The position numbers and the translations under genes are program-made. The notes below the pieces were generated by a model. It searched no databases and had not been told where the DNA came from. It saw only the letters and a list, made by a program, of their open reading frames with translations. Shown piece after piece: positions 40,008 to 64,000 of a stretch of 64,000 nt of DNA (the first letter of the stretch is position 1; the number at the start of each line of letters is the position of its first letter). This DNA comes from Mytilus edulis (taxonomy: Eukaryota). The stretch covers positions 50,282,001 to 50,346,000 of the forward strand of contig NC_092356.1 of assembly GCF_963676685.1 (NCBI RefSeq), in the 5' to 3' direction.

Positions 40008-40225
40008 GGGCTATCCCAGAAAAAAAATGTATGGAGGGGTTAGAAGGCACATTGTATTAATAATACATGGGTGATGGGTATCAGAGCAACTTTTCACACT
40101 ATAATGCACTATAATTCTCAATTACAATTGTCTGGGTGGCGGGTGCTGACAAAAACACAGCCTTCCACCCACCTAACCCCCCCCCCCCCCCCCCCCCCGC
40201 ATACATTTTTTTTCTGGAATAGCCC
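40008..40225. mobile_element. PIF/Harbinger (Tourist-like) MITE
   Basis: TIR gggctatcccagaaaaaaaatgtatg / catacattttttttctggaatagccc; TAA TSD. Confidence 0.8.
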
Positions 40226-41198
40226 TAATCACAAACTTTGACATTTTCAGATGTTGGAAATGGCAAACTGATAGAAAGAGTATAATGCTTTGGGGACCCA
40301 GTCACATAAAAACCAATACTAAGTACAAATAAGTGAAGTTTTACTCTGTATGATGATAAACTGATGACAGATATAAGGAGAGACTGGTGGATTGTAAAGT
40401 TGGTCTTTAAAACAGCATAACAGTATAACAGTATAGAGTTTGACTGATATAATGGGGTCAATTTTAGAGGACTTGAAATTCAAGCTTTACAGGTGCCAGC
40501 AGCCTACAATACATGAACTTGATCTAAACCTTATCATATACAAATGAACCAAAAGCAGTAACATATAGTCATTATAAGGCTCAGGGAAAAAAATGTGTAT
40601 GGCTAACTGTTGGAATACTGGGATGACACAATAATGCCCTTCCTCTTACATGTGTGAGGAGAAGATACAATGAAATAAGAGATACAGTATAGTGACATAA
40701 CAAGCATTCATTTCTAAGAAACTTGTTTTGAGTTATTTCATATACATTTTCCCCTTCCCCTTTCCCTTTTAATTCATTCATTAAAATAAAATAATGTTTT
40801 ATAGACAAATGAATTTCTACATGTATTCTAACCCAATTTGAAGACCCCATACTGTAACCACAATGTAACCATACCTAATCTTTAACACACCATTTATTAC
40901 CTTTTATCACCTATTTACCAACAAACAAACCACTCAGACACAATTATTTTAATCAGGTGTTAACTTAATTGATGTTTTTGTGAAAATTTAATGGTCAATT
41001 GGTCAATCTATTTTACCTTCTGATTATCTTATCAAAAATCTACACCTATATCTATGACCTAAGGCTACTTTAATACATGTATCTAAATGGCTAAAATCTA
41101 ACTGTCCCTTTGAAATAATAATGAACATAAAAAAGATAACAGATAAAAGGAATTATAATCAATGAAAGAAATATGGAACCTAGGTTTTGTATTCTGGC

Positions 41199-41392
41199 TA
41201 GACTTGCTACATGTCCCTTCCTAATTATGTTTTTTCCTTTTTTTTCAGTTTTGCCCCTTTACTAATTTTACTGCTATAACTAGGAGATTTCAATTATACC
41301 TTTCTCCAAGGGCAATCAGTAGACTGGCACTTATCAGTAAACATATAAATTAGTAAGAGAGAAATAATAAAAAGGGAATTGAAGCAAGTCTA
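41199..41392 (-). mobile_element. MITE with 9-bp TSD (Mutator-like), copy 2, inverted relative to copy 1
   Basis: Same body reverse-complemented; TSD tattctggc on both sides. Confidence 0.85.
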
Positions 41393-42883
41393 TATTCTGG
41401 CCTCATGACCATTTGTGATTCTTGATTATTAATTATAATTAATGTAAGGACCTCATTGGAAACAAGCGTTTTGTTTTCATTGGCCATTCTCAGCAGAAAT
41501 AAGGCATACAATATAACTGTGATCTCATCCATTACTATATCTCAAGGTTTTATGTAAATATGTTTTCATTTGCATTTGTATATATATTGCTTTTACTTAT
41601 ATAAATATTTTTATACTATTATTTAATGAAGATTAGATATTTAATAAAAATATAAAGATCCAGGTGTTGAAATATTTCACAATGAGCATTAAATGGAGTA
41701 TCACATTTTTATTATTGTACATTTAAAATTCCTTTCTTTTTCTTTTTTTGAAAATTCATATCCTAAAGATTTTTTCTGGTGATGAGTAAGCATTGGCAGA
41801 TGTTTTTAATGTAAATCTATGCTTGTATACAACATTCTCTTATCTTGGTGCAGCATTCATACTTTGTGACATCCAATGGCTTGTAAAACCAATCAGATAT
41901 ACAGATAATGATAAAAATATTCCCATGATCTAAACAATATGATGCTTTAACATAACATCAGAAAAGTAAGGCAGGTCTTTACAAAAAGCCAGTGGAAGAC
42001 TCAAGGATTTTCAAGAGGGACCAGATCAAGAAAATGTATTAACTTTCTTTACTTTTTAACCTTAAGTACACCCCTCCCCTCCCCCCCCCCCCCAAAAAAA
42101 AAAATAGCAACCCCAAAATGTTTTGACCCTTAGGTGTTAATTCTTTTGGAATTCATGTAAAACAGGTTAAGCCTTGACACCATTACAGTAATATACACAA
42201 TGTATAGCAATGACCTGAGCATCTAAGAAATCTTTTTAATTCAACAGAAAACTGTCATTAATTCAATTATTATACATTTTCAACTAATTTAGTAACTTAC
42301 CCTTACAGCCTAGAATAAATTATATTCCTAAGTTTTTGTATAAAATCCTAACATGGAATGTTCCCCTTCAGTTAGTTCACAGATAATAAGACAATTTGAT
42401 ATATCATACTTTCTCACACTAATGGACTTTCATGACCAAAAAGATAAACCCATTTACATATTAATATATAAACAACATGCATATGAAATAATTGTAATAA
42501 ATTATTTATAACTGTCCAGTGAACTACCCCCTGCAGGCTACTTGTTGGTCAAATAAGGTCAATAAAATATCACCAGCAGAGGTGTCGGACATAGATCAAA
42601 CTTTATAACTGTAAATGATATTCTAGTGGGTTTTTTTCTAGACTTGGATGACATAGATATTTTCTTGAATCTATGAGTTTCAGATGTCCGCTAATTGGTA
42701 TCTTCCACCTATGTTTTAAGGTACAAATCATATAAAATAAAGTTGTTATTTTAATAAGTATTCATTATATAGAAACAAGGAAATATACCACAAAGGACTA
42801 TAGAACAAAAGTAAGTCCAGTTAGGCAAACTACAGGTAAAATGAATCAATGGACAACAGGACAAAAGTTGGTAAACTACCTTG

Positions 42884-43263
42884 GTTAACTACCATGAAGG
42901 ACTACAGGACAAATGTTAGTTAAGAAAGGTAAACTACTATGAAGGACTACAGGACAAATGTTAGTTCAGAAAGGTAAACTACTATGAAGGACTACAGGAC
43001 AAATGTTAGTTCAGAAAGGTAAACTACTATGAAGGACTACAGGACAAATGTTAGTCCAGAAAGGTTAACTACCATGAAGGACTACAGGACAAATGTTAGT
43101 TCAGAAAGGTAAACTACCATGAAGGACTACAGGACAAATGTTAGTTCAGAAAGGTTAACTACCATGAAGGACTACAGGACAAATGTTAGTTCAGAAAGGT
43201 AAACTACTATGAAGGACTACAGGACAAATGTTAGTTCAGAAAGGTAAACTACTATGAAGGACT
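42884..43263. repeat. 45-bp tandem array, left part (~8.5 units; degenerate units extend back to ~42790)
   Basis: unit aaactactatgaaggactacaggacaaatgttagttcagaaaggt. Confidence 0.97.
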
Positions 43264-45917
43264 CACTAGTAGCCAGATTAAAGTCTGAAACGGTCATTTT
43301 GGTCTGATCAAGTCTTGATTGACTCAATTTACCGCTAGAGAAATACGTTGAGACTTTTCAGATTTTAAGACACTGTTCAGATATGTTATGTCAAGTCTGT
43401 TCAGTCATGTCAAGTTAATCAAGATGGAAGGCTCTAGCGTTCAATCAAGTCTGTTAAGACTGTTTTGGACAAATTAAGACCAATCATAAAAAGTATCTTT
43501 CAAAACTTTCAGATCGGGTTAAGATCCGTTTAGTGTGTTAGAATGATATTAGGAGTTACGCCCCTTTATGTGGATGATACATTGTATTATAAATGCTAGA
43601 ATAAAAAATGTATATTATTTTGAATTATTAAACATAAAATCATTCGTTGGCTTTTTATTTCTGTTGGTCTTTGTTTAAGGTGTAAGAGAATAAATTATAT
43701 ATTATACAGTTTTGTTAGCTTGTTTTGTTGTAGAAATAAATTATTCGCCAATAACTGTTTCTGATTTTATTTTTTATTTTTTTATTTTCTGGTGTTAATT
43801 TATGTATTTATCTACTTATTCTTTGAAAAAAGTAATTGCAAATTTTGGACGTAACACTAACAAAAGAGTGACAACAACATCTTATAAATTTCATACGTCC
43901 AAATCATGTTTCTGGATTATACTTCATCTGGAACGATCAACGCAAAATACAAGTATTTTATATGTCAGATAATTTATATCGTTAATTTCGTTATCCTCAT
44001 CAGGCCGCATCAGGGAACCATGTCTCCGTTTGAACTAAGCTTCTGAAACTGCTCTAAGGCTGTGAAGTGAGAGTGTTAAAACTATAAATAACATACCATC
44101 GGAAAGAGAAGGATGTCGATAGGTTTTACAGAAAAGAGAATGATCGGCTATAAATATGAATAATAGAGAAAATGGAAAAAAATATAAAGAATGGAGAATA
44201 ATAAGGTGCTTGAATATAACGAATTGATAATAATAGACAAAAAGTATAAAGATAAAACCCTGCCTACTAAACATTAAAGAATACAGAAATGAAGGACCCC
44301 AGATCCTCATAGATTAAAACAATATAACCTAATTTTAAGTTCAGCATCGAGTATATGTCTTAGTACATCTTTTTGTAAATGCGCTTATCCTTTCTTTCAT
44401 TTGAATAAAAAACTTATTTGATATAAAATATGTATTTATTTGTTTTTTCAGATTGCACTATTATAAATAATTCTTCTTCGTCTTCTCCTTCTAAACTGTA
44501 AAAGTAACGTATGTATGCGTAATATTCGGTCTATAAAGATTAAGTTCGATGGCACGTGCCAATAATCCAAAGGTATTAAAATCAACGATCCATAAAATTA
44601 CGTGGCAATTACAATGGCTATTTCACAGTTATATCATACGTGCACCTGTCATGGTATCATACATGTACCTCCGTATGTGTAGTACAAGGTTCTAAATCAT
44701 TTTTGATATCTTCTTTCTAACACTATTGACGACATTGTTTAAACTACATGCTCATGTCACAAAACCGCAAATTTAGTATAGTTATTAAAAAGATAAACGA
44801 TATTGAAAATGCATTTTTTTCTATCAAAAATGTATGGTCGTATATTTGTAACTCTAGGTGTTTACCTAAAATGTATTGAATATGTAAAAGTTGAGATTTT
44901 TTTTTCAAATATTTGCCAAAAGAAACATTTTCCGAAAAAAAAACCAATCCATATAATAACGTTTTGTCCTTTAAATCTTTTTTTGGGGGTCCGTAGAAAT
45001 ACCGCAAAAGACCCCTTTAGTGCAAAGAACAAAAAATTGCACTACGGACCTGATGGAATGATAAAATTGACACAAAGGACATTGCATAACTAAGTTAACG
45101 TTTTAGAAATAAATAATTTCAAGTTTTATAATCATATCTTGAGTAATAAGAAAGTTATTTAATGTTCTATCGACACGCGCCACACTCAGTTGATTGTAAT
45201 CTATAGAAATTCATTTTCGTTCAACCATGACCCGTTTTGATTAGACTAGTATACTTATTAAAAATGTATATATTATGTTATTTTATGTTGTTCTTATTTT
45301 TTATGGTATAGTTATTACTGCCGTATCTATTTTGCTTTTCTGTCTGCTATAGTTTTTACTTCCATGTAAAAGTGTATTTTCTACTTATTTTTGTTTCTTT
45401 TAATTTCGTTTGCTTGTTCCGTGAGATCACTTTTTTAAGTTTTCTAGTAATATTTTATAAAGATATTTTAAAATAGTAAAAAATGTATAGAGTTTGTTTA
45501 CCAACACATACTGACATAGAAGATACACATGTTTCGCAAAGTATCACAGTTTATTACATTTTTGTTGAGCCTGCTACTTTTGTTGCAAAAGCGAGACATA
45601 GCGATCCACAAACCACAAATATTCACTTTGTGGTTAAAGTGTTTGAGACTATAATAACTTTCTTAAACTATCCTGGATTTCTACTAAACTAGGACAGAAG
45701 CTTGTTTTTGATCATAAGATAGCTGGAAAAAAAAAAGAATTGTTTATCCGTATTTTTATTTATAACTGACTTTTTGGTTTTTCTGTAAGCTTATATGAAT
45801 TCACTCTGTTTAATAAAAATCACATTTTTATGTCGGGGCCTTTTAATGATCGGTCGACTATATGGCAATGTTTTTCTCGTTATCGAAGGCCGTATTGTTG
45901 CCTATAATTGCTTTTCT

Positions 45918-46093
45918 ACCTCAGGCATAGATTACCTTAGCTGTATTTGGCAAAACCTTTAGGAATTTTGGTCCTCAATGCTCTTCAACTTCGTACTTTA
46001 TTTGGCCTTTTTAACTTTTTTGGATTTGAGCGTCATTGATGAGTCTTTTGTAGACGAAACGCGCGTCTGGCGTATATACAAAATTTAGTCCTG
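45918..46093 (+). mobile_element. Retrozyme/Penelope-associated repeat unit carrying a hammerhead motif
   Basis: Contains the type I hammerhead fold at 46030-46073; the outer boundaries rest on my recall of this repeat family. Confidence 0.6.
46030..46073 (+). ncRNA. Type I hammerhead ribozyme motif (C3->U variant)
   Basis: gcgtca-tTGATGA-gtct(tttgt)agac-GAAA-c(gcgc)g-TC^-tggcgt: stems I, II and III all pair; cleavage triplet GUC ends at 46067. Confidence 0.75.
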
Positions 46094-47551
46094 GTATCTT
46101 TGACGAGTTTATTTGCTATAAGACGTCTATGACTATTTTCGACCTTGTCGTCTTATTTTTTAAATTACGTCATTGATGAGCTGATCACTACAACGTTTAA
46201 ACAAAATATTCGTTCCCGTGAAAACTATAAGATTTGTTTAACTTTCAAATTTCATCGTGATCTCTTCTCAGGATATAACGGCTATCTGTATGTTAGTTTT
46301 ACAGCTAATTTCCCAATGCATGTAAAGCTTAGTTTGTATATTTTACAATTGTAATTGGGATAATATCCAATCAAATTTAAATATAATATGTACAGATTAA
46401 AATGTGCCTCTACATTGCTTGAAGATGTCAATGTTATTTACAAAGCTTGAATTCATGTTTATACCAACAGAGCAAGCAAGCCTATCAAAATTTTACTCTA
46501 CAAGCATTAGGAAATAAGCTGTAAAGTCGACAAGATAACAGGTTAATGTATTCAAGTGATTTTCAGAATTTAAGATTTGTTGCAATTCTAAAGTACAATG
46601 GTTAAATCAATCTTATTATCTTTGATGTGCCACATGGGCATCCCTATAAAAAAAAGACAGTCCAGTCCATGCGTGGCCCATGACATTAGATATTATGCAT
46701 GTCAGTGGATATTTTCTTTGTGAAGCTAGCACTAATAACCTATATTATTTACGTGTCTGAAATATTTTGAAAAGTGTAACTTAACTCTTGAACAGACCAT
46801 TTATAAACGTCGTTTGTGTGAATTCGGGATTTACACGTATTAAAAACTCTTCACTTTTCGGCATTCGAGAAAACATATATTCAGCAAACACTATTGAGGA
46901 ACACAAATAAAAAATAAATTTAATTTGTTAATATTTGCAACTCTTAAACCCAGCTGATATTTTTTTTATTTCTCACTTGACAAATGGGATATACACGACT
47001 TCCCAAATTTAATCTAATATTCACCTAATATATGCTCAAAGTCAACTTATTTTAAAGAAGTTTTAAAAATAAAATGGTTAAATGCATTTTTTTTTTTACA
47101 TAAAGCACAAATATATTTACATGTTTCATTATCAGATCAAAATATCTTAAATACCCCAGTCCAGAGATACTGTGTATACATGTACCATATCGAGAATTTC
47201 ACATTCATACTTGTTACGTAACGAGATATGTGCTCATGTAAAAAGATCCAGCAGGTGGTGTATATTCTAAAGTGTTTATCGTCTTCTATTATACATGCCG
47301 ATGGCGATGACATTTAGCTTGAGTGCCATTTTGTTTTCGCAAAGAAAAACAAAAAATTAAACAATTTTATAGATATAATATTCTGTTGAAAAATCATTTT
47401 TAAAGGTGAACAGATAAGCATAACGTCTTCGCAATTTCTTGTTAACAGCCATGGACACAGATGTCAGAATGAATAAGAAAACACTAAATTCTTAAACAAT
47501 ATATTGTAAAATGGACACCAAACACATTTTGATAGAATAGTGTACTGATAG

Positions 47552-48145
47552 TATAAAAAAGAAGATGTGGTATGATTGCCAATGAAACAACTATCCACAA
47601 AAGACCAAAATGACACAGACATTAACAACTATAGGTCACCGTACGGCCTTCAACAATGAGCAAAGCCCATACCGCATAGTGAGCTATAAGAGGCCCCGAT
47701 AAGACAATGTAAAACAATTCAAACGAGAAAACTAACGGCCTTATTTATGTAAAAAAAATGAACGAAAAACAAATATGTAACACATAAACAAATGACAACC
47801 ACTGAATTACAGGCTCCTGACTTGGGACAGGCACATACATAAATTATGTGGCGGGGTTAAACATGTTAGCGGGATCCCCACCCTCCACCTAACCTAGGAC
47901 AGTGGTATAACAGTACAACATAAGAACGAACTATAAAAATCAGATGAAAAAGGCTTAACTCATCAGATGGACAAAAATACAAGTGGACGCGGCCCGGTAC
48001 TTATACATCCCGACACAAAAAGACACAATGAACAAATCTGAGAGCATTCGCAGTTATCTGACAGCTAGTTCAAAGTCACTAACAACTAATAAAAAAATCA
48101 TGTAACTAAGACTAAACTATCAATCCGTACACATCCAACATCCAT
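47552..48145 (-). mobile_element. Longest copy of an abundant dispersed repeat (class unassigned, retroposon-like); more than 10 partial copies in the window
   Basis: Common end ...ttgtctcattggcaatcataccacatcttctttt also seen near 3340, 11115, 15065, 30945, 34050, 34805, 49945, 50010, 55297, 61395. Confidence 0.75.
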
Positions 48146-48505
48146 CTATCTTTTTCAGATATTTCTTTTCCGCCATTCATAAGTTTAAGGTTTACTTTGA
48201 CTTAATGCTATACATGTATAATGTGTGTTCAGAGATGGATTTATAAACTTTATGCTTAAAATAATAAACCCAAACAGACAATAAACAGGTGATTTTGGTG
48301 ACCATTTAGACTTCGTTTAGATAACACACGTCTTCAAAATTAATAGTTTAAAATAAAATGTTGGGGATTTAAAATGTATATCCAAACCTATTCTATTACT
48401 TTCCTCTGAGCAAAGTCTTAAGAAAAATATATATTGAAACTGTAGGAGATCATAGTGGGTTGAACGACAACGAGACACTCGCAACCAAACAACAAAAATC
48501 ACATA

Positions 48506-50239
48506 GTCACGTTTTTCCAACATTTGATAATTAGACTAAAACAACATAAGGGATTAGGAGGTCCTCATAAGGACTGGCATCGTGATAATTACCTGTAATT
48601 CACCTATATCAGGTCTTAACTCAAATATTGTAAAAAGGGGGATATTGTTAAAAAATATTTATATCAAAACATCAAGGATTTGTATAGTACTATACAAATC
48701 CTTGAAAACATTAACAAACCATATATTTTTGGTCGAGTATAACCAGAAACGGTTACGTAATTATTTTCATCCGCCGTATTTGATTTACAAAATTAAAAAG
48801 GTTATTCAACAAAAAAATCCTTAAATAAACAAGGGAAATTCTAATCAAACTGAAAATTTCATAAAAAATTATGAAGAAATAATCTCGAAATTATTTTTTT
48901 TAAAAGATATTTTTTTATTGAAAGTAACATGTTCACTGACTGTACCTCATTTTAGTAATTTATTCCATTACATGATATATTTTTGTATTTCTGTTACATG
49001 TAGATGTTAAAATCTAAACCGATGCAAAACAGCAAAGTTTTATTTATGTAAAAAGTCACCAAAAGCGATTGTCTTCTAGTGCGAAGAACCATATATTTAC
49101 CTAGTCGTTCTGTCTGTATATCACTAGAGCCGAAGCCAGTTTTCGTGGTATGCTGTCTTGGCAGATGAAATAGTCAGTCGTATATCTGTTCACTTTTTCC
49201 TCGAAAACGGAGCTGATACAAATTGGGTACATCACGTCGCGTCATGATCTATATAGTGTTGAACTGTGGGAACTGGCTTGGTGAATATTGTGCACTACTA
49301 GTATTTTCGATTTGTTACTTAAGCTTTGGACAAGTTGACTAAGAATTTTGAATTAAACTGTATAGGTAATAATAAGCTGCGTTTTGTACTTTTATATAAG
49401 ATTAATGACTCAAGATATATAAATTCTTAATAGCTCTCAAAATATTAAATGTTAATTTTTATTCAAGATCGCAACATTGTAATCTATAATACATTATTGT
49501 GAAAAATAGAGAACAAAATTATGAAAAAAAACAAAAAATTGCTTCCGGCCGTACGGTAACGGATACTGGATGTGTAGTGATTGATAATTTAGTCTTAGAT
49601 TATTTGTTGATTGTTTATGTATGTTTTTGTACAGTTCTTTTATTGTTCTGTTGCACCAATGTCTCAAGATAAGGGGGAGTGTTGGAGCCTGTAATTCGGT
49701 GGTTGTCGTTGCTGTGTAATATATTCGTTTTTCGTTCATTATACTGTACATAAAATAGGCCGTTATATTTCTCGTTTGAATTGTTAAACATTTGTTTTCT
49801 CGGGTCCTTTTAAAGCTGACTATGCGGTATGACTTTGCTCATTGTTAAAGGCCGTACGGTGATCTATATTTGTTAATGTCTGTGTCATTTGGTCTCTTGC
49901 GAATAGTTGTCTCATTGGCAATCATACCACATCTTCTTTTTTATGTATAATTGTTAACTTCTATTTCATTTGGTCTCTTGTAGAGAGTTGTCTCATTGTC
50001 TATCATACCATGCACATATAAAATAAAAAATTACATCACTGTGTTAGACTATATGGACTTTTACAATTTTGGGAGACTATTAAAAAATATTTATTTCTTT
50101 AAAAAATATATACCTTTTTAACAATATTTTGGTCAAGAACAGGTGAATTACAGGTAGATATCAAGATCCAGTCCTTAAGAGGACCCCATAATCCCTAGTG
50201 CTGTTTTAGTCTAATTACCAAATGTTGGAGAAACGTGAC
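48506..50239. mobile_element. ~1.7-kb element bounded by ~100-150-bp imperfect inverted repeats, nested in the CACTA element
   Basis: gtcacgtttttccaacatttgataattagactaaaac...acctgtaattcacct (48506-48605) vs its reverse complement at 50141-50239. Confidence 0.7.
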
Positions 50240-52744
50240 CACAAGGACGGCTAGTGGGCAACATATAAGTGTTCACCAATAGATAGGTGTATACACAACA
50301 TGCCATTTCTAAATCATCCCTTATGTCTTTATTATTGTGAATAATTTATCCCGGATAATAGAATACATGTTCTAGTCATGTCTTTGATTTAACAGAACAA
50401 ATGATAAAAGATTCAAAAATTTGTTGTTTGTGATTATTCATAGTTGACTAGTTCTATATTTACCAGTGACACGAGTCCTAATTTTCAAGAAAAGGGACAG
50501 AAAAAGTATTAAACAAAAATAACCGGTTTTTCAAAACTATATTTTTGAAAATTCACTGCATGATTTAAACAGCTTTAAAGTGTTTCATTTAATTCTATCT
50601 TTTAGCGTATACGAAAAATTGATAACAAGTTAAACTTCAGTGTTCATGACTTACGACTATTTTATATTTCTTGTGAAATTGATAGATGAGAAGGTTTTCA
50701 CAAATACCGAACAAAAAATATAGCGTAAACGTCAATTAATGGACAAGCAACACAACGAGAAAAATAAAATTTATATGAAATAAAGTAACAACATAAGTTT
50801 ACAAATACGTACTTACATGTTGTAGGTGCATTTAATAAAAACAACATTTGAACTTATTATTAACATTTTTTTTTTTCAATTGTAATTTTATGTGTATGTA
50901 TATTTAATGTTACCCGATATGGAGTTCTTCTAAAAATAAAAATCACTTGAATGGGTATTTCTGGTGTATATACATGTATCACACGTGCTATCTACATGTA
51001 CAATATACGGAAATGACACGGCTGGGTATTGTAAAGTTACTGAAGGAAGATTAATGTCAGCTGCATATCCCCGGACGAAGAATTTACTGGTTTGTCAAAA
51101 CGGTCAGTTGTAATTTGTCAAATTGTAAAGGTTTGAATCGCGCCCATCTCTTCTTTCTTTTTTATAATATGAATTGCGCCAATAAATGGAACTTTACACA
51201 TTCCCCATTTCCATTTTCCATTTTATTAGTTGTGTCATATTTACCTCGAAACGATTTACTTATTTGCACGTACATGTTACATTAGAATACTGACTTCAAC
51301 TGTTAAATACCTAAATATAATTACTAAAGATATGATTATAAAATTTGAAATTAAGTACTTTAAGAAAGTCTCCATTTTATGTCATGTTTTTGTGTCAGTT
51401 CTATCACCCCATCAGGTCCTAAGTGCATTATTTTGTTCTAAGTGCACTAAGGAGACCCTTTGCTTGTACCTGTCAATACCGGAAAGGACCTCATCAATGC
51501 ACTAAGAACAAACATCTGAAAACAAGTCTATAATATTTGCGCAATTAAATGGTTGTTTTATTGGCGCAAATGAATGCTGCAGTTTTTACAATAAAGCATG
51601 TAAAATAAGAATTGGCGTAATTAAGTTGTTGCGCAAATTCATTCTTTTTCAGTGAAACTAGATATCCAGTGGCAGATTCAGAGGGGGCGTAGAGGATGTA
51701 CGCCCCTCTTCAATGATATCTCAATGTAAATGTAGTCCTGCTTTTTTTTAATTTTACACTTTATTCTGTCCTGCATTTCTTAGTTATTAATTTATCCTGA
51801 CTTGTTTTTCATTAAGTCATCATGACTTTTCTATTTCGCAAGATGGCCATACTGCCTTTTTTCTCTTAACTCCCGTCATGCTTTATTTCAATTTTTATAC
51901 GTCAGACAAACTTCTTCATGCATGTAACTTCATATTTCAAAATGGATACGAAATGTCTTAATTGATACGTTCTACATTGCATTTAAAACATCCATTGGAA
52001 GAATATTGTATAATAAGAAATCCTTGTCCGCTGTTGGAAGTTCTGTTTCGCCATTTTTCGTTCTTGTCATGAGACGATATTTCAGGGGTTTTGATTGTTA
52101 AACTCGTTAAATCAAATAACGAACATATTCCATCTCAACATGAGAAAGAGTGGCTCATTTACATTTATCAATGATTATCGTTTATAAGATGTTGTACTTT
52201 CAATGCTATTTATAAACGCCGAGTAAAATTTTAAAAGTTTGGTATACAAATTTTAAATTATAATTGATCTTAAAAATATTCAGTAGACAATGGGACATAT
52301 CAAACAATCATTATTCATCTATTATATTATAACAATTTTTATTCACAAAGGCTTACAATGATAAATGAAATCAATGTTTTGTTGTCAATGTTACAATTTA
52401 TGTATTGTTCTATGGTGACGAGTCTTTGAGTTCTGACGAAAATTATAGTGTTTTTCTATCTTTCCACAAAGTATATAAAAGTACCAAGCGTTTTTCTCAA
52501 CTTTGACAACCTTCTTCTGTAACAGATGTTGGCAAAATTTGTCAACGGCAATGTTCAAAGCGCTTAGACAATTCCAGTGCGATTCAAATATGATGTAATG
52601 GTATAGAAAAACCTTGCAGCTGAGTAACTTTTGACAAAAACATGCTACATTTGAGAAAAAAGGGCTGTAAAAATTTTACATATATCTGCCGTCGCCATAT
52701 TGGGATAGTCGTAATTCCAGTTACGGTTACCAGTTTAATACCAG

Positions 52745-53053
52745 TGCAGTTGAGAAATATGGTACATTTATTCAAATGCAGATATAAACCTTATCAATAT
52801 TAAACCCAATCCCGCAAGCAGCTGTGGTCATCCTGTTGAGGATAGTATTCACTATTTGTTAAGTGCCCTTTTATCAACGAAGCAACAGAAATATTGTTTT
52901 CAAAATTAGAAAGATCTACTATATCCATTTTGCTTTCATTGGCTGGTGACGGTGACCTTTCCTTTCAACTATTGTATCTGTAATTATAATGTATGTTTCT
53001 CTGAAAACTTGTATTTAGTTTTTAGAGAATAAAGTATCTATCTATCTATCTAT
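52745..53053 (+). mobile_element. 3' fragment of a CR1/L2-type LINE
   Basis: Degenerate NADINLINIKPNPASSCGHPVEDSIHYL/KCPFY, resembling the C-terminal Cys/His region of CR1/L2 ORF2, followed by aataaa and a (tcta)n tail. Confidence 0.6.
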
Positions 53054-56000
53054 TTCAGAAAAACAAAGATATGTTTGAGTCTGTACAATCATATATCAGA
53101 AATACACTAAGATTTAGAACATTCAATTAAAATTCGAAATTCCAACTTCCTATCTCTTCACTCTAGTTCAGTTTTAAATATTACTCTTATACGTTTTGTT
53201 TTTGAAACAAGGCTATTTTTTTGTCAAAAGACAAGCGCAATAACCCCAAAGCGAATTGCGAGAAGTGGTTTCGTATTTCGTTAAAGAAAGAAAATACTAA
53301 TAGTTTATGTAAAATAACGTACGGTGTCGCGTTTATATCTTTTTAATGCATTGGTGCAATTGGATGCAAACAATAATGACCATAAAATATCAGGTTTGCG
53401 AGATCAGACAGTAACCTAACAACTAAACAATTGAAAACTTAGAGATCAATGTTTAACATTCGCCAGCAATGAGCAATTTTCATTAATAAAACATGATTTA
53501 GTCGAATACTTTGCGAGTAAAGAAGAAGAGACTACCATAGATTTGTTATTAACCCCAAATGCTTGATGGGTAAAAATCAGTATTCAGGAATTAACTTTTT
53601 TTTGCATTACACCTTGAAGTATTTCTAATACATTGTTGTTTTCCTGTTCTATGTAGCTTTCTTTCTGGCAAACACGGTTTTATAAATGCTGACAGGCACC
53701 GACCATTGAAAAACAATCGATCTGTTATGTAATGCAAATAATTGTTTTTTTTTTTATGGCAAATAAGAAAAAATACCGTTTGATTTAAAATTGTTTAAAA
53801 TTATTTAGAATAGATTTATGAAAATAACGTATATCAATGTGAAAAGGCTAAACTTTAATTTGTGCCGTAGGGATGTTATTGAGTGGTAAAGTTTTGTTTA
53901 CAATTATTTCCCACGTATTTCCCTAGTGAAATCTGCAATAATTATTATATCATCATGTTGTTGGATTTTCACATTATAACAAAACTAAGAATATGACGGA
54001 TGAATTTATAGTTAGCTGTTTCAATGTCCAGTGGCAACTATTAGATGTATCATTAGGAGGACATGTACAATGTTATAATAACATTAGATATATGTTTCAT
54101 TATAATGCGTTATTCTAATTGGCTTCTCTGCAATCTTGCGTTATTCCTTAATCAATTTAAATACACAATAAAATGTATCATTCATGATGACACGAGGTCC
54201 CACAATAGAGTGCACAAGTAAATAAACACAACCGTCCTTTTGATGATCAATTTGTTAACTTGCTGGGACTATCATTCTAATAGCATAATAGTCCCCGTTA
54301 AATCTGAGCTCTACCGTTAAATAGTACTGTAATTGTATTAATGTTATTATTTTATTTTTACGCTGTCTTAATTTGTAATTTAATATAGTTATTTTTAAAA
54401 GTATAATATAGTGGTAAGTCATTTTTGGGCAGGATATTGTTTGTTTTAGAGTGTATGAATAATTTTTATTGCAATCAACTTAAAAAAAACTAAACTATGT
54501 GGACCGTATGTCATCAAATAAATTTTACCTTATACAAGACAGCTGATTGGATAAATATGATAGGTTGTTACGCCTACATTGATACTGATGTCCAATCGAA
54601 TACCAGCAGACACCTGTCAGTAAAAAACAAATTGCAAGCGTGGCCGATTTATGTGTTTATTCGATATTTGAAAAATAATTTAGATAGCCGCTATTCGTTT
54701 ACTCTTTTTCAGGTGAATTCCAATAACTGTTTTTTCACTTTCTTATTAAACAGATGAGAAAGGTATTTAAATATGAGCGTACAACCAGTAACGGAATACT
54801 ACAAGCATTTTATATACCGTGTGTATAAAAAACATTATCAAATTATATTTGTAGATTGTAAAAGATTAAGAATATTTTTATATCTGTTCTAAATCATCTG
54901 AAATAAAATAAAACATATTTCTCTCTGCCTGAATGCAATCGTAAGCAAATTTTTTTTTACTTTTTTTTTGTTGTCTATTTGCAAATGACGAAGAATTCTC
55001 CTTAAACTGAAATATTAAACAGACAGACTAACTTTAAAGGACAAAATACTAGCGTGTACTTTCATCCAAGGAAATGAATTTCTATAAAGTAACTAATCTA
55101 AGTGGCCATCGATGTGTAATATTTGACACTGGACATTATTTTTGAAGCAATGCAATACGTATAATGTATACTATCAATCAAAATTAAAGACTTTTGAATG
55201 TAACAATATGGTACAAATCCATTTGATTTATTGAATTTTTATATATATTTTTTTTTATCTAAATGAAAATGTTGTAAACTGCTCCCAGTTAATATAAATA
55301 AGAAGATGTGGTATGTGTGTCAATGAAACAACTCTCCATCATTCAAGTCACATGGTATAATTTAATAAGAGGTCAAAAGTACGACCTCAACACGGAGCTT
55401 TGACCCTCATCGAACAGCAAGCTATAGCGGTCCCTAAAACGACAAGTGTAAAACAATTAAAAATGAAAAACAAAAGTCTAATCTATAAATACGGTCATTT
55501 CGCTACGTTATTTTATAGCTTTTTGGTCAATTTCGAAATAGCAAGTAAGCGTCTCACTGTTTTTCAAAATGAGTAGTAACACTGGTGCTTCAAAATATCT
55601 GATACGAAACAGAAATATAAACCGTACATTAGATTTTATCAATCGTGTCTTAACTAACGTTGTTTGGTATTTTTCTATGATATGATTTACTCTTGTATTT
55701 AATTCGTGCTAAAAAAAAATGGCGAAAAAAAAATTCAAATGAGTTATCGACATCGGTCTTTATATGTATATAATGGTCAATATAAACTGTCAATTAAATT
55801 TAAAAAAAAAGCTAATATAATTGTTGCATTTATTAAAAAAAATATAAAATAATGTTTTATTTGTAAATGTAATAATTTAACCCGGTTTAACCTTATACAT
55901 CTTATATTAAAGATAAAACGTGGAACTTCATTCATTATACGTCCAGTGACACGAATGCGTAATTATTTAGGTAGTTTATGCTTATCCGTTTCGGTTGACT

Positions 56001-56301
56001 GCTTAAATAATCCGTTTATTAAAATGTAAATAACTTTCACCAAGCATCTGTCATCTGTGTACAATTTTAAAATAAAAAGTAAATCATATACTTAAAATAT
56101 ACGTTACTTGACCAAATATAGATAAGAACTATTACTCTACATTAGAAACAAAAAATGTTTAAGAACATCTTTGAGATATATTTAATACTGATCATTATAT
56201 CTTTAGAGGCGGAATGCATACATACAGGACTACTTTATGTGAGACTGTAAAGTTTTTATGACAAATTTTCCGGTTACAACAATTAATCTTTTCTCATATA
56301 A

Positions 56302-56528
56302 GGGACGACATCAAAAGATCGATGTAGGATAAAAAACTTAAATCAAATAGTTTGGGGGTGGGGGGTCAACATTGCTGCAAGTTTTGTTAATCTAAAATCG
56401 AGTTTACCTATATTCATATAGGTAAATCAATTTTTCCCAAATTAAGTTAAGAAGGGGGGTAGGAGGGTCAGCGAAAAAACTATGTGAATTAAGTTTTTTA
56501 TCTTACATTGAACTTTTGATGTCGTCCC
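56302..56528. mobile_element. PIF/Harbinger (Tourist-like) MITE nested in the CACTA element
   Basis: TIR gggacgacatcaaaag / cttttgatgtcgtccc; TAA TSD. Confidence 0.85.
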
Positions 56529-57008
56529 TAACCAATGAAATGTTAAAGATTCTATCGGAAATAAATGAATTGTTTTTAAAGTTTGCATACTTTATTTAAT
56601 TAAATAGATATACAGTCATATTAAAAGATCACAAAAGAATATCATCCAAGATATAGAGATTATATTCATAAAGGGGGAGTAACCCCTGATAAAAACAGAT
56701 AAAGTGTCGCCCGTTTTATTCAAAATATTTAAAATCTTAACACAACTGAACACGATCTTACTGCAACTAGACAAGTTGTTCGCCGTTGGTCTTATTTAAT
56801 CTGAACGTGATCTAATCAAGTCTTATTTGGATGCTAGACGAATCTGTCTTATTTATCTTGACACGACTGATCTGACTGAACACAATATATCTTAACAGAG
56901 TCTGAGTGTCTAAACAGGTCTTAACGTTTTTCTCTAGCGGTAAATTAAGTCGATTAAGACTTGATCAGACCAAAATGACCGTTTCAGACTTAAATCTGGC
57001 TACTAGTG

Positions 57009-59560
57009 ACTACAGGACAAATGTTAGTCCAGAAAGGTAAACTACTATGAAGGACTACAGGACAAATGTTAGTCCAGAAAGGTAAACTACTATGAAGGAC
57101 TACAGGACAAAAGTTAGTCCAGAAAGGTAAACTACTATGAAGGACTACAGGACAAAAGTTAGTCCAGAAAGGTAAACTACTATGAAGGACTACAGGACAA
57201 AAGTTAGTCCAGAAAGGTAAACTACTATGAAGGACTACAGGACAAAAGTTAGTCCAGAAAGGTAAACTACTATGAAGGACTACAGGACAAAAGTTAGTCC
57301 AGAAAGGTAAACTACTATGAAGGACTACAGGACAAAAGTTAGTCCAGAAAGGTAAACTACTATGAAGGACTACAGGACAAAAGTTAGTCCAGAAAGGTAA
57401 ACTACTATGAAGGACTACAGGACAAAAGTTAGTCCAGAAAGGTAAACTACTATGAAGGACTACAGGACAAAAGTTAGTCCAGAAAGGTAAACTACTATGA
57501 AGGACTACAGGACAAATGTTAAAGTTCAGCAATGCAAACTACTATGAAGGACTACAGGACAAATGTTAGTTCAGAAAGGTAAACTACTATGAAGGACTAC
57601 AGGACAAATGTTAGTTCAGAAAGGTAAACTACTATGAAGGACTACAGGACAAAAGTTAGTCCAGAAAGGTAAACTACTATGAAGGACTACAGAACAAATG
57701 TTAGTCCAGAAAGGTAAACTACTATGAAGGACTACAGGACAAATGTTAGTCCAGAAAGGTAAACTACTATGAAGGACTACAGGACAAATGTTAGTTCAGA
57801 AAGGTAAACTACTATGAAGGACTACAGGACAAATGTTAGTCCAGAAAGGTTAACTACCATGAAGGACTACAGGACAAATGTTAGTTCAGAAAGGTAAACT
57901 ACCATGAAGGACTACAGGACAAATGTTAGTTCAGAAAGGTTAACTACTATGAAGGACTACAGGACAAATGTTAGTTCAGAAAGGTAAACTACTATGAAGG
58001 ACTACAGGACAAATGTTAGTTCAGAAAGGTAAACTACTATGAAGGACTACAGGACAAATGTTAGTCCAGAAAGGTAAACTACTATGAAGGACTACAGGAC
58101 AAATGTTAGTCCAGAAAGGTAAACTACTATGAAGGACTACAGGACAAAAGTTAGTCCAGAAAGGTAAACTACTATGAAGGACTACAGGACAAAAGTTAGT
58201 CCAGAAAGGTAAACTACTATGAAGGACTACAGGACAAAAGTTAGTCCAGAAAGGTAAACTACTATGAAGGACTACAGGACAAAAGTTAGTCCAGAAAGGT
58301 AAACTACTATGAAGGACTACAGGACAAAAGTTAGTCCAGAAAGGTAAACTACTATGAAGGACTACAGGACAAAAGTTAGTCCAGAAAGGTAAACTACTAT
58401 GAAGGACTACAGGACAAAAGTTAGTCCAGAAAGGTAAACTGCTATGAAGGACTACAGGACAAAAGTTAGTCCAGAAAGGTAAACTGCTATGAAGGACTAC
58501 AGGACAAAAGTTAGTCCAGAAAGGTAAACTACTATGAAGGACTACAGGACAAAAGTTAGTCCAGAAAGGTAAACTACTATGAAGGACTACAGGACAAAAG
58601 TTAAAGTTCAGCAATGCAAACTACTATGAAGGACTACAGGACAAATGTTAGTTCAGAAAGGTAAACTACTATGAAGGACTATAGGAAAAATGTTAGTTCA
58701 GAAAGGTAAACTACTATGAAGGACTACAGGACAAAAGTTAGTCCAGAAAGGTAAACTACTATGAAGGACTACAGGACAAATGTTAGTCCAGAAAGGTTAA
58801 CTACTATGAAGGACTATAGAACAAAAGTTAGTCCAGAAAGGTAAACTACTATGAAGACTACAGGACAAAAGTTAGTCCAGAAAGGTAAACTACTATGAGG
58901 ACTACAGGACAAAAGTTAGTCCAGAAAGGTAAACTACTATGAAGGACTACAGGACAAATGTTAGTCCAGAAAGGTTAACTACTATGAAGGACTATAGAAC
59001 AAAAGTTAGTCCAGAAAGGTAAACTACTATGAGGACTACAGGACAAAAGTTAGTCCAGAAAGGTAAACTACTATGAGGACTACAGGACAAAAGTTAGTCC
59101 AGAAAGGTAAACTACTATGAGGACTACAGGACAAAAGTTAGTCCAGAAAGGTAAACTACTATGAGGACTACAGGACAAAAGTTAGTCCAGAAAGGTAAAC
59201 TACTATGAGGACTACAGGACAAAAGTTAGTCCAGAAAGGTAAACTACTATGAGGACTACAGGACAAATGTTAGTCCAGAAAGGTTAACTACTATGAGGAC
59301 TACAGGACAAATGTTAGTCCAGAAAGGTTAACTACTATGAAGGACTATAGAACAAAAGTTAGTCCAGAAAGGTAAACTACTATGAGGACTACAGGACAAA
59401 TGTTAGTCCAGAAAGGTTAACTACTATGAAGGACTACAGGACAAAAGTTAGTCCAGAAAGGTTAACTACTATGAGGACTACAGGACAAATGTTAGTCCAG
59501 AAAGGTTAACTACTATGAAGGACTACAGGACAAAAGTTAAAGTTCAGCAATGCAAACTAC
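57009..59560. repeat. 45-bp tandem array, right part (~57 units, with 47-bp and 44-bp variants); degenerate units continue to ~59780
   Basis: Same unit as 42884-43263; marker variant ttaaagttcagcaatgcaaact at ~57519, ~58601, ~59538. Confidence 0.98.
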
Positions 59561-59993
59561 TACAAAAGACTACCAGACAAAAGTTAGTCCAGTACGGAAA
59601 ACTAATAACCAGGAAAGGACTATAGGACAAAGTTAGTCCAGCATGACTAATAGCCACAAAGGACTACAGGACAAAAGAATGTCCAGCAAGACAATCTACC
59701 ATAAATTGGACTACAGGACAAAAGTATGTCCAACAAGGCAAAGTAAATATGAGGACTACCAGACAAAAGTTTGTCAAGCAAAGCCAGAAAACTTAGTTAT
59801 AATACCAAATGTAGAACAACGGTCAATTAAAGCAAAATGACATGAAGACAACTAAATAGTATCTAGTAAGATGATTTGAAGGTAAAATTAACAAACAGCT
59901 GACACAAAAATGAAGAACAAGCTAGTCTTTTATTAGTTAATTTACTAATGAGAAACAAGTTAGATTAGTAAATAAACTACAGGTTTATATGAG

Positions 59994-60810
59994 TTATTGC
60001 GAACCCTATGATAGTTTTCCATAGATTCACCTGCAAGTTACCTGTCAATTTAAACTTTTGGCAGTTCTATTGTCCCATCTAACAAATACAACAGGTATTG
60101 TTCTCTGTGTAGTTTATTCACTGGGACCTTTAAATTTCTTCCAAGAGAAATATATCACTCATTGATTAATTTACCTGAACAAAAAATTGAACTGTCAATG
60201 ATGAAAAAATACTTATACCAATACTAAGTAAGGACTCACAAAACTGCATGTGGTGTTGTATTTATTCAATACCAATAACTCGTTTTTAATGTGTTCAATA
60301 TTAATACTGATTCAAAAATTAAAAGTTGATTTCTGATCAAATATTCAATATTTTTGTGTGTTTGATAATTAAAAATATGAATATTATTATTTTTAAATTA
60401 AGGTCTTTATAAACATAAGTCTATAAATGAACAACAAAAAAAAACATGTAAATTCATAGGAAAATACTAAAAAATGTGTCTGAAATAAACTTTTTATTAT
60501 TAAACCAGATTTTATATTGAACAGATTGAAAATATATTAATGATATATTGAATAAATATAATATTGCATACAGTTTTTGTGAGTTTATAGAAGTATTTCA
60601 ATAAAAAAAGAAGGTAATTTTTTGGTCAGGTAAATTAATCAATGAGTGATATATTTCTCCTAGAAGAAATTTAAAGGTCCCAGTGAATAAATTTCACAGA
60701 GAACAATACCTGTTGTATTTGTTTGATGGGACAATAGAACTGCCAAAAGTTTAAATCGACAGGTAACTTGCAGGTGAATCTATGGAAAACTAAGATAGGG
60801 TTCGCAATAA
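59994..60810. repeat. Foldback structure: 195-bp inverted repeats around a 427-bp AT-rich spacer
   Basis: 59994-60188 is the reverse complement of 60616-60810 with few mismatches. Confidence 0.9.
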
Positions 60811-63457
60811 TTATAAAACTGATAGACATCAATACAATTGTACTACAAATGAGCTTTCCATGGAATTGTTATAGCTTAAACATTGTTAAAAGGTGCAATT
60901 AATTGCTGTAATAATGCCAGGTGATATGGACAATTAAATGAAGCTTCAATAAATCATTAACACCAATTTTTGTCTGGTTCATATCAGTGTTTTCTTTATC
61001 TGGGTGTGAATGGTAACAAAGCACTCAAATAACACTGATTAGTTGTGCAGACAAATTATTCAAACATGCATCAAGCTATTTTAGACTGCAATTAATTATT
61101 ATAGGAAGGCACATAGAAGGTTTACAGTTTGCTTTGAACAAGCTGAAAGAGAAACAAAAGAAAATTGAATCCTGAGGAATACAGATAATACTGTGAATTC
61201 AATAGGATACCAATTTTTCATGGATTTCTTGGTTACTGGTGAACCACCAATGAAAGAGCAACAAATTGAAATTTTCCATAAGGTTGTATCATTATGCAGA
61301 TTTTGGCAAAATAATGAAACCAAATATCCATGAAAATACTTGTTAAATCCTCAATCTATGAAAAAAATGAATCCACAGTATATGATTTATAAAAGTAAGA
61401 AGATGTGGTTTTGATTGCAAATGAGACAACTATCCTCCTGAGACCAATGACATAGAAGGTTAGGAAATGTAGGTCACCATAAGGCCTTCAACAATGAGCA
61501 AAATCCATACTACACAGAAAACCATAAAAGGCCCTCATAAAATAAATGTAAAACAATTCAAACAATTCTCTTGTTTCAATCATTGCATCTTTTCAAGACT
61601 GATTAACTTGAAAAAAGTAAAAACACAAAAATACCGAACTCCGAGGAAAATTCAAAAAGGAAAATCAAAAATCAAAAGGCAAATCAAAAGTCCAAACACA
61701 TCAAACGAATGGGTAACAACTGTCATATTCCTGACTTGGTACAGGCATTTTCTAATGTAGAAAATGGTGGATTGAACCTGGTTTTATAGCTAGCTAGAGT
61801 GAGTTCTGTTTTACATCACTTTTATGCAAGAACCAAGATGTTGATGTTTATCTGATATGACAGATTATGACATGTGCAGCATGCAGATATGCATACACTG
61901 AAACATAGTGCACCTGCCTAATACATGTGTAGAATGTGTGTTATTACTTGTTTTTCAGGAAGATTATATTAGTTTTGAGTTTTGTACATGTAAATATGTC
62001 TTTGTACATGTATCTATGATTTAACAGACATCTGTTTTATTTCTTATTCCTTTATTTTGTAGATGTTTTGATCTTTTTCACAGTGACATTCTTGCTGTCT
62101 TTAGATTTTTACATAAATTCATATATGTAGTGCTCTTATACATAATGCAGACGAAACCATTCATTTATGCATGCTATTTTCCACACTTTTATGCCCCCAT
62201 TTGTTCCCAATGGCTTTAAATATTTGGCTTCCAAAATCTTAAAAAAAAGTGTGCTAAAAAATTTCAAAAACACACCAGGAACTGACATTCTACCATTTAC
62301 TCAACAAAATAATTGAAGAAGAACATATTTCTTCTTATCTTCAACAAAAACCTTCCTCTAGAAAGAAACCAATTGCTAATTCAAGTCCGCATTATACATT
62401 ATATTTCATTTGTTGTAGAAAAATCAGATATGCGTAGATTCTGTAAAAAATTGCTGAACCTGTATTCAAACTTATTTTACAGGTCAATTTCTTCACAAGT
62501 AAATTAAACATTGGTAATCATCAAAGAAGTTGCAGAACTTCTACTTGAAACCAAGACACGTTTTTCCCTGTATATTTCCTTCCCATTGTAAACCACATGG
62601 CCATATCTTTCAGACTAGACTGGTGATGATGATGTTGGTCTAATGTAAATATAATATATATCTCTAGCATCATTAACCACTAATTACCTTACATTGTTGA
62701 TAGCAGGCCTGCTCAAAAATTCTTCTTTACAAGCCTCCTGATTCTTTATTACTTTATTGTTATAATTAACATGTTATGAGGTGGTAGACATGGGCCTGTT
62801 TTTGATTTACATGTTCATCAATGGTTGAGATTCTCACAAAACATGTTTAACCCTGCGGCATTAATGCCTGTCCAAGTCAGAAGCCTGACTGGCCTTTCTC
62901 TAATTTAAGTTCTTTATGTGCTTTGAATTTTAGTATGATGTCCATTTTCACTCAACTAGGTGAGCAGCTGAGGCCCATCTCTGAGTGGGATTTTCTCATT
63001 GGGTTGAGGACCAATTATTGGCCTTCTGCTGTTTTCTGCTCTTTGGTCGGGTTCTTGTCTCTTTGACATATTTCCCATTTCCATTCTCAATTTTACATGA
63101 AATTTGTCGTTCTATTTTTTACAAGGTATTTTGCAGATGAATTATCTTAATTTTTTTTTACACAGTATTAAACTCACATAAAAAATGTAAAGTATCTATT
63201 TCTGGTGGTGAAGTCTTCATGGTACATTTAGCAAAAATACCATTAGACAGAATTATAACAAATACTCAAGTTAATTGTTAGAATTCTGTTACATTCCTGC
63301 AGATATTTAGATATGGCTTCTTATTTCCAATGAAATAAATCTTTAAAAAAGAAGTTTAAAGCGGTCAAATTCTGGTAAAAATAGTTTTTAGTTCCTACTT
63401 AGACACAAATGGATAAGACAGACAGAAAATTCAGTCTACACTGACTGCATTTTATTT

Positions 63458-63802: not shown

Positions 63803-64000
63803 CTGCATTTTATTTGAATGTGATACAAGTTTCTTTTATAACTGATTTTAACTTCCATCATCAAATCTGATATAAACATAGACATAATGTCCTTATGTTT
63901 GAGGGCATGCACTTGTTAACCCCATTTGGGCCTCTATTCCAATGAAGAACATATGGTCCAGTGTTTAATAGATTACCCAACAGAAAATGAATTTGATTTT

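What the first reader, a model, noticed from the sequence alone, without database searches (positions are those of the whole stretch)
43261..57011. 13.7-kb CACTA-ended element with no intact transposase inserted into a minisatellite
Seen: CACTAG...CTAGTG termini, 91-bp TIRs (1 mismatch in the first 53 bp) and an exact 3-bp ACT duplication. Removing the element and one ACT restores a perfect 45-bp unit. No ORF of 100 aa or more lies within the interior, which is a patchwork of MITEs, a Helentron-like piece (~45560), a retrozyme-like unit, dispersed repeats and a LINE end. Established: CACTA termini with a 3-bp TSD are the plant-type En/Spm signature; animal CMC members (EnSpm, Chapaev) have CAC ends with 2-4-bp TSDs. 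Inference: a very large non-autonomous, cargo-carrying element mobilised in trans. It is a plausible source of kb-scale hemizygous presence/absence variation.
Basis: partly seen in the sequence, partly recalled or inferred. Interest (0 to 1): 0.8.

Follow-up and report, generated by a model that had tools for sequence, protein, structure and literature searches.

The report
Giant gene-less CACTA-type transposon in mussel
This is a real, recently mobile 13.7-kb jumping element of the blue mussel that carries no gene of its own, belongs to a family of at least 31 similarly large copies, and must be moved by an enzyme encoded elsewhere that I could not identify.

Summary
Window 43264-57008 (13,745 bp) starts CACTAG and ends CTAGTG. 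It has 91-nt terminal inverted repeats and an exact ACT duplication. Removing it restores the 45-bp minisatellite register.

It is one copy of a family. The terminal 39 nt (up to 3 mismatches) occurs 126 times in the 1.37-Gb genome, which is named Mytilus edulis by an identical protein. These ends pair into 31 elements of 9.8-19.9 kb plus two short deletion derivatives. All 11 copies checked have different flanks and a 3-bp duplication.

The interior is a shared core of about 12 kb, not private cargo. Two nested elements lie in it:
- a 1.73-kb TIR element that marks a five-copy subfamily only 0.42-0.57% diverged;
- a 227-bp MITE private to this copy.

Open frames are no longer than in shuffled sequence, and no Pfam or transposase remnant was found.

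The genome holds 53 Transposase_21 (CMC/EnSpm) matches, but none lies near a family end, so the partner is not identified and the superfamily call rests on termini and TSD alone. Hemizygosity could not be tested.

The scan noted other CACTA elements in this genome before, including an 18.8-kb one without transposase; I did not check those.

Verdict: new member of a known kind.

The parts
42883..43263 (.). Left part of the 45-bp minisatellite (8.5 units), the target of the insertion
   Evidence: TRF, period 45, 96% matches; register restored after removal of the element
43261..43263 (.). Left copy of the 3-bp target site duplication ACT
   Evidence: Sequence; matches 57009-57011
43264..57008 (+). 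The element proper, 13,745 bp, CACTAG...CTAGTG, non-coding
   Evidence: The boundary is fixed by 30 other loci where the base before CACTAG varies and by contigs of other runs that break exactly at 43263/43264
43264..43354 (+). Left terminal inverted repeat (91 nt; weaker similarity to about 43452), rich in AAGTCT/AGACTT and TTAAGAC motifs
56918..57008 (-). Right terminal inverted repeat (weaker similarity from about 56819). It differs from the left at position 17 (TTTAAG against TTAAAG) in the listed pairs
57009..57011 (.). Right copy of the TSD ACT
57012..59783 (.). Right part of the 45-bp minisatellite (TRF row 57008-59783, 61.6 units)
48506..50239 (.). Nested 1,734-bp TIR element (72-nt TIRs). 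It is present at the same site in 5 family copies and absent from 7, and occurs on its own elsewhere in the genome
   Evidence: (I2)
56302..56528 (.). Nested 227-bp MITE (GGGACG...CGTCCC ends, TSD TAA), private to this copy
   Evidence: (I5)
46030..46073 (+). Single hammerhead type I-like motif, below Rfam's gathering score, with U where the consensus CUGA has C
   Evidence: 28.3 bits against 34
50760..51666 (.). Piece of an older dispersed repeat built into the family core (independent copies at 84-88% elsewhere)
   Evidence: query 521-1427
47546..47980 (.). Dispersed repeat piece in the core, with relatives elsewhere in the window and inside the nested 1.73-kb element
   Evidence: (I3, I4, I7)

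Best explanation
Window 43264-57008 is one copy of a young, non-coding, non-autonomous cut-and-paste DNA transposon family of Mytilus edulis. Its core is about 12 kb.

Shown:
- defined CACTAG...CTAGTG ends with 91-nt TIRs;
- a 3-bp target duplication at every checked insertion;
- dozens of large copies at unrelated sites;
- continued movement after the core had taken up a 1.73-kb nested element;
- a 1.1-kb internal-deletion derivative that also moved, so the ends suffice in cis.

Inferred: a DDE transposase made by another element binds the TIRs and the subterminal AAGTCT/TTAAGAC motifs, excises the whole 12-14 kb and reinserts it with a 3-bp staggered cut. The hallmarks fit the CMC (CACTA/EnSpm) superfamily best, and this genome encodes intact transposases of that superfamily. 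The specific partner is not identified.
For: - Ends, TIR, TSD and restored minisatellite register.
- Copy number: 126 matches to the terminal 39 nt at up to 3 mismatches (60 forward, 66 reverse; 0 for the reversed control).
- Hand pairing of ends gives 31 elements of 9.8-19.9 kb (24 on chromosomes, 7 on unplaced contigs) and two short ones (546 and 1,113 bp).
- All 30 loci fetched with the TIR share at least 1.0 kb of the left interior at 95-100% (27 of them align over about 1.6 kb). The base before CACTAG is T, A, C or G.
- TSDs in 11 of 11 copies checked: ACT, AGA, ACA, TTT, TCT, TTA, TTA, TAG, TTT, TAA, TAT.
- Colinear core in 11 other copies.
- The nested 1.73-kb element sits at the same site in 5 copies.
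- Substitution-only divergence is 0.42-0.57% within that subfamily, 0.51-0.57% in a second one and 1.6-2.0% between groups, over 11,131 columns shared by nine copies.
- Non-coding: 22 open frames of 60 aa or more against 15.2 in shuffles, longest 114 aa against a shuffle maximum of 134. 0 of 20 frames reach a Pfam cut-off.
- 8 of the 14 AAGTCT/AGACTT sites lie in the two terminal 250-bp bins.
- Contigs of three other public runs break exactly at 43263/43264 and continue into unrelated sequence.
- 53 Transposase_21 matches in the genome, with open frames up to 1,015 aa. One was read as an intact 973-aa ORF.
Against: - No autonomous partner was found.
- None of the 100 listed TIR ends (of 126) lies within 30 kb of any of the 53 Transposase_21 matches; the nearest is 40 kb away on C12. 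This was a comparison by eye.
- The 973-aa mussel CMC transposase leaves no tblastn trace in the nine full-length copies, the eight further family loci searched or the window, nor in an older 16.4-kb relative.
- The 8 kb around that transposase shows no similarity to the family's ends.
- A 3-bp TSD is not unique to CMC: Zator and AcademX also make it (PMC10045372, passages), and both are reported in bivalves (PMC10294476, passages).
- Movement is inferred from copies. No excision footprint or empty allele was seen.
Confidence: 0.72

Rival explanations
1. It is a non-autonomous family of another superfamily that also makes 3-bp duplications (Zator, AcademX or PIF/Harbinger) and is moved by that transposase. 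The CACTA-like end would then be a coincidence.
For: - The partner was not found among Transposase_21 loci.
- Zator and AcademX make 3-bp TSDs (PMC10045372, passages).
- Academ and Zator are reported almost only in bivalves among molluscs, with 100 curated Academ against 2 CMC consensus sequences (PMC10294476, passages).
Against: - The ends read CACTAG...CTAGTG in the copies checked.
- Only 3 of 11 TSDs are TAA or TTA, the Harbinger preference as I recall it.
- The nested MITE in the same element shows what a TAA-duplicating, GGG-ended element looks like here.
- The scan's earlier notes describe autonomous CACTA elements in this genome, one family starting CACTAG. These are leads that I did not check.
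Confidence: 0.15
2. The family is autonomous after all. It would encode its mobility function in many small exons, in a protein type unknown to Pfam, or in only a few master copies that I did not fetch.
For: - Only 13 young copies (9 whole, 4 in part) and parts of 5 older relatives were read.
Against: - Open-frame content equals shuffled sequence.
- No open frame of 100 aa or more is shared by all the young copies read.
- The extra DNA in the 19.9-kb copy has no open frame over 128 aa.
- No Transposase_21 match falls inside any paired copy (compared by eye).
Confidence: 0.06
3. The copies arose by segmental duplication or assembly error, not by transposition.
For: At least 9 copies on unplaced contigs share one flank, a telomere-like tract, and recur every 28-36 kb. 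Those copies are duplicates of one insertion.
Against: - Ten further copies have unrelated flanks and their own 3-bp TSDs.
- The minisatellite register is restored exactly.
- Contigs from other individuals end at the same terminal base with other flanks.
Confidence: 0.02

Closest known systems
Non-autonomous CMC-EnSpm elements of animals, e.g. zebrafish EnSpm-N49/N49B (PMC13189230, passages read)
   Same: CAC-type ends, a short TSD, no transposase, still mobile and mutagenic, and thought to be moved by an autonomous element with near-identical TIRs.
   Different: The zebrafish insertion is 2,469 bp with 15-bp TIRs and a 2-bp (CA) TSD. This family is 12-14 kb (up to 19.9 kb) with 91-nt TIRs and a 3-bp TSD, and its partner is unknown.
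Large non-autonomous CACTA elements of plants (recalled, no call)
   Same: CACTA ends, 3-bp TSD, subterminal short repeats, a multi-kb non-coding interior, amplification to many copies.
   Different: The host is an animal. No sequence relation was tested, and the plant comparison comes from memory only.
Autonomous CACTA/EnSpm elements of the same mussel genome (earlier scan notes s1-841846, s1-839805, s1-837393; unchecked leads)
   Same: Same genome, CACTA-type ends (one family said to start CACTAG), sizes of 12.9-32 kb, young copies.
   Different: Those are said to carry a transposase and a second gene; this family carries neither.
MITEs
   Same: Non-autonomous, TIR-bounded, moved in trans. 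The family's own 546-bp and 1,113-bp derivatives are MITE-like.
   Different: The main family is 15 to 50 times longer than a MITE.

Membership tests
CMC (CACTA/Mirage/Chapaev) superfamily | Termini 5'-CACTA...TAGTG-3' (CAC at least) | tested here: met
   CACTAG...CTAGTG in the window, in 30 loci, in 10 further copies with both ends read, and 126 genome matches to the terminal 39 nt at up to 3 mismatches
CMC (CACTA/Mirage/Chapaev) superfamily | Target site duplication of 2-4 bp, 3 bp for EnSpm (definition recalled) | tested here: met
   3-bp TSD in 11 of 11 copies checked
CMC (CACTA/Mirage/Chapaev) superfamily | Mobilised by a CMC-type DDE transposase (Pfam Transposase_21), encoded in the element or in a partner with matching ends | tested here: inconclusive
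   Nothing is encoded in the element. The genome has 53 Transposase_21 matches, but none lies within 30 kb of a listed family end (by eye). The one transposase locus read (8 kb) does not reach its own termini
CMC (CACTA/Mirage/Chapaev) superfamily | Arrays of short subterminal repeats (typical of CACTA elements; recalled, not exclusive to them) | tested here: met
   8 of 14 AAGTCT/AGACTT sites and 5 of 10 TTAAGAC/GTCTTAA sites lie in the two terminal 250-bp bins of 13.7 kb
PIF/Harbinger | 3-bp TSD with TAA/TTA preference (recalled) | tested here: not met
   3 of 11 TSDs are TAA or TTA; the rest are ACT, AGA, ACA, TTT x2, TCT, TAG and TAT
Zator / AcademX | 3-bp (or 3-4-bp) TSD plus the superfamily's own transposase and termini | not testable with these tools
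   The TSD length fits (PMC10045372, passages). I had no reference termini or profiles for these superfamilies, and the paper on Academ was not held
MITE | Short size, under about 0.8 kb (recalled) | tested here: not met
   13,745 bp here; 31 paired copies of 9.8-19.9 kb
   One motif only, 28.3 bits against a gathering score of 34, with U at the consensus C of CUGA. No direct repeat bearing a second motif

The most novel reading that the evidence does not exclude
Mussels would have a transposition system that routinely moves 12-20 kb of gene-less DNA. This family's driver would be either absent from the sequenced haplotype or not a recognisable CMC transposase. If so, such orphan giant non-autonomous elements could be a direct and datable source of the large hemizygous segments typical of bivalve genomes.
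Probability: 0.15. Interest if true: 0.6.

Novelty: new member of a known kind. Interest (0 to 1): 0.42.

Why it matters
Non-autonomous DNA transposons of animals are usually described as short MITEs. In the passages I read, the bivalve survey (PMC10294476) treats non-autonomous DNA elements as MITEs and curated only two CMC consensus sequences.

Here a 12-14-kb element without genes has spread to at least 31 large copies, and one subfamily is under 0.6% diverged. Each new insertion therefore adds or removes about 13 kb at once. Oyster work links hemizygous segments to TE insertions, CMC-EnSpm among them (bioRxiv 10.64898/2026.02.10.705023, passages).

The family gives a clean test case. Its ends are exactly defined and its subfamilies are datable by nested insertions. 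A natural 1.1-kb derivative shows which parts are needed in cis.

Its share of the genome is small: roughly 0.4 Mb for 31 copies in 1.37 Gb.

Tried and rejected
1. Autonomous partner among family relatives. I read 10 kb inward from four older left ends (88-92% alike). They share only the first 1.1-2.2 kb. Their long frames are a nested LINE-type reverse transcriptase piece, simple repeats and a neighbouring CARD-like frame. The centre of a 16.4-kb pair with more diverged TIRs has no frame over 113 aa.

2. Partner among CMC transposases. There are 53 Transposase_21 matches. One locus was read. Its flanks run off the 8 kb I could fetch, so its termini stay unknown.

4. Empty allele. The unique left flank occurs once in the assembly, so there is no alternative haplotig.

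5. Public runs. Of 24 runs listed, the best hold 4 of the 7 sampled words of a 90-nt junction probe. In four runs laid as Logan contigs, none of the 32 listed pieces bridges 43263/43264 (745 pieces were not shown), so presence or absence of this insertion elsewhere is undecided.

6. Rejected: a tRNA-derived SINE inside (0 tRNAs). Also rejected: an Rfam family other than the weak hammerhead.

7. Papers. Searches found no description of a large non-autonomous CACTA family in bivalves. I opened no supplementary TE library; the additional files of PMC10294476 may hold a consensus of this family.

Full report
**1. What is there**

The element proper is window 43264-57008 (13,745 bp).
- It begins CACTAG and ends CTAGTG. 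ACT at 43261-43263 is repeated at 57009-57011.
- The ends form a 92-nt inverted repeat at 93%. There is one mismatch in the first 54 positions. Weaker similarity runs to about 190 bp at 81%.
- The insertion sits in a 45-bp minisatellite, with 8.5 units to the left and 61.6 to the right.
- With the element and one ACT taken out, all 13 unit spacings across the junction are exactly 45.
- The window has no N and is 31% G+C.
- The flanks from 30000 to 43260 and from 59700 to 64000 hold no ORF of 110 aa or 90 aa or more respectively. The target is therefore non-coding DNA.

**2. It is one copy of a mobile family**

The window is C13:50282001-50346000 of a 1.37-Gb genome in 2,368 contigs. A transposase read from another contig is 100% identical to a protein named Mytilus edulis on a contig of the same length as C12.

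The terminal 39 nt, with up to 3 mismatches, occurs 126 times (60 forward, 66 reverse); the reversed control occurs 0 times.

All 30 loci fetched with the TIR share the left interior at 95-100%, over at least 1.0 kb and in 27 of them over about 1.6 kb. The base before CACTAG is T, A, C or G, which fixes the terminus.

I paired left and right ends by hand. This gives:
- 31 elements of 9.8-19.9 kb, 24 on chromosomes and 7 on unplaced contigs;
- one 546-bp and one 1,113-bp derivative.

I read both flanks of 11 copies. Every one has a 3-bp duplication at an unrelated site: ACT, AGA, ACA, TTT, TCT, TTA, TTA, TAG, TTT, TAA and TAT.

The 1,113-bp copy keeps 1,037 bp of the left end and 77 bp of the right end. 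The ends therefore suffice in cis.

In Logan contigs of four other public runs, the first kilobase of the element is covered in every run. In three of them, contigs stop matching exactly at 43263/43264 and run on into unrelated sequence: X5 has 2 and 4 such records, X4 has 3 and 5, and X1 has 3. One of these runs bears a different organism label.

**3. The interior**

Eleven other copies are colinear with the window over a core of about 12 kb. Two pieces are later insertions.
- Window 48506-50239 is a 1,734-bp element with 72-nt TIRs. It lies at the same site in the window copy and four others, and is cleanly absent from seven. It also occurs on its own elsewhere at 87-95%.
- Window 56302-56528 is a 227-bp MITE with a TAA duplication. 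It is found only in this family copy and has more than 2,000 candidate places genome-wide.

The core also contains older repeat pieces: 50760-51666 and 47546-47980. Other tiles match essentially only family members.

Older relatives share the first 1.1-2.2 kb and then differ or are rearranged. The core was therefore assembled stepwise in a lineage that stayed mobile.

Divergence counts substitutions only, over 11,131 columns shared by nine copies:
- The four copies with the nested element differ by 0.42-0.57%.
- A second group differs by 0.51-0.57%.
- The groups differ from each other by 1.6-2.0%.
- One copy stands at 6.5-7.7% because of a divergent or misaligned block at 52264-54263.

The two tiles covering the last 515 bp of the right end are the least variable (0.33% and 0.63%, against 0.93-1.94% in the other well-aligned tiles).

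**4. No coding capacity**
- The window copy has 22 open frames of 60 aa or more, the longest 114 aa. Fifty shuffles give a mean of 15.2 frames, a mean longest of 102 aa and a maximum of 134 aa.
- 0 of 20 frames scanned reach a Pfam cut-off.
- No open frame of 100 aa or more is shared by all twelve copies. Frames over 150 aa (188-255 aa) occur in only two copies, near copy-specific DNA.
- ARAGORN finds no tRNA.
- The only Rfam match is one hammerhead type I-like motif at 46030-46073. It scores 28.3 bits against a gathering score of 34, and has U where the consensus CUGA has C.

**5. How it most likely works**

Shown: defined ends, a fixed 3-bp duplication, many unrelated sites, and movement both after nesting and after internal deletion.

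Inferred: a transposase supplied in trans recognises the TIRs and the subterminal motifs. 8 of 14 AAGTCT/AGACTT sites lie in the two terminal 250-bp bins. The enzyme would cut out the whole unit and reinsert it with a 3-bp stagger.

The left and right TIRs differ at position 17 in the listed pairs, so the two ends are distinguishable.

The genome has 53 Transposase_21 matches with open frames up to 1,015 aa. One was read as an intact 973-aa ORF with that domain.

**6. What speaks against, or is missing**
- None of the 100 listed ends (of 126) lies within 30 kb of a Transposase_21 match; the nearest is 40 kb away on C12 (compared by eye).
- The 973-aa transposase leaves no tblastn trace in the copies searched or in an older relative.
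- The 8 kb around that transposase does not resemble the family ends and does not reach its own termini.
- Zator and AcademX also make 3-bp duplications (PMC10045372, passages), and both are reported in bivalves (PMC10294476, passages).

**7. Presence/absence**

This could not be tested.
- The left flank is single-copy in the assembly, so no second haplotype is present.
- The best of the 24 runs listed holds 4 of 7 sampled words of a junction probe.
- None of the 32 listed contig pieces bridges the junction, and 745 pieces were not shown.
- Short contigs cannot see an empty allele inside a minisatellite.

**8. Comparison and verdict**

The closest described things are non-autonomous CMC-EnSpm elements of animals. 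The zebrafish example is 2,469 bp with 15-bp TIRs and a CA duplication (PMC13189230, passages). From memory, the large non-autonomous CACTA elements of plants are also close.

CMC-EnSpm insertions are polymorphic in oysters (bioRxiv 10.64898/2026.02.10.705023, passages).

Earlier notes of this scan describe autonomous CACTA elements of 12.9 and 32 kb, a family starting CACTAG, and an 18.8-kb CACTA-like element without transposase in this genome. I did not check them.

Searches found no paper on a large non-autonomous CACTA family in bivalves. Supplementary TE libraries were not opened.

I file it as a new member of a known kind: real, young and unusually large for an animal non-autonomous element, with ordinary mechanics and an unidentified driver.

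Noticed in passing
L007-L015, L024, L056 (unplaced contigs C1778, C1585, C1582, C1192, C944, C705, C671): One family copy lies inside a short telomere-like (CCCTAA)n tract with TSD TAA. The insertion together with its flanking DNA recurs every 28-36 kb on several unplaced contigs, which looks like a tandem segmental duplication of about 28 kb.
   Followed up: partly
window 56264-57008 against the rest of the element: The two tiles covering the last 515 bp of the right end vary least among nine copies (0.33% and 0.63%, against 0.93-1.94% in the other well-aligned tiles). This fits selection on cis sequences in the source lineage, but it could also be chance.
   Followed up: no
L054:8135-8485 (+), C6 about 93.80 Mb: A 117-aa open frame next to a truncated old family copy looks like a CARD/death-fold domain by eye. 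No search was run.
   Followed up: no
L052:1938-3067 (+), C12 about 66.99 Mb: Two adjoining open frames (223 and 164 aa) have a LINE-type reverse transcriptase look (YADD motif). They are nested in an old, rearranged relative of the family.
   Followed up: no
L055:1344-1900: A 550-bp piece upstream of the CMC transposase ORF matches arrays with a spacing of about 1,748 bp on C2140, C1589, C2 and C3. This is a long-period tandem repeat.
   Followed up: no
L055:1145-1290: A dense run of GTCTTAGGAC / GTCCTAAG palindromic motifs lies upstream of the 973-aa transposase ORF. It resembles a subterminal binding-site array and loosely resembles the TTAAGAC motifs of the family studied here.
   Followed up: no
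window 41199-41393: A repeat of about 195 bp in the unique left flank has many copies at 83-94% across the genome.
   Followed up: no
C8:4744176-4744721: A 546-bp derivative is bounded by two right-type TIRs (both TTTAAG) rather than one left and one right.
   Followed up: no
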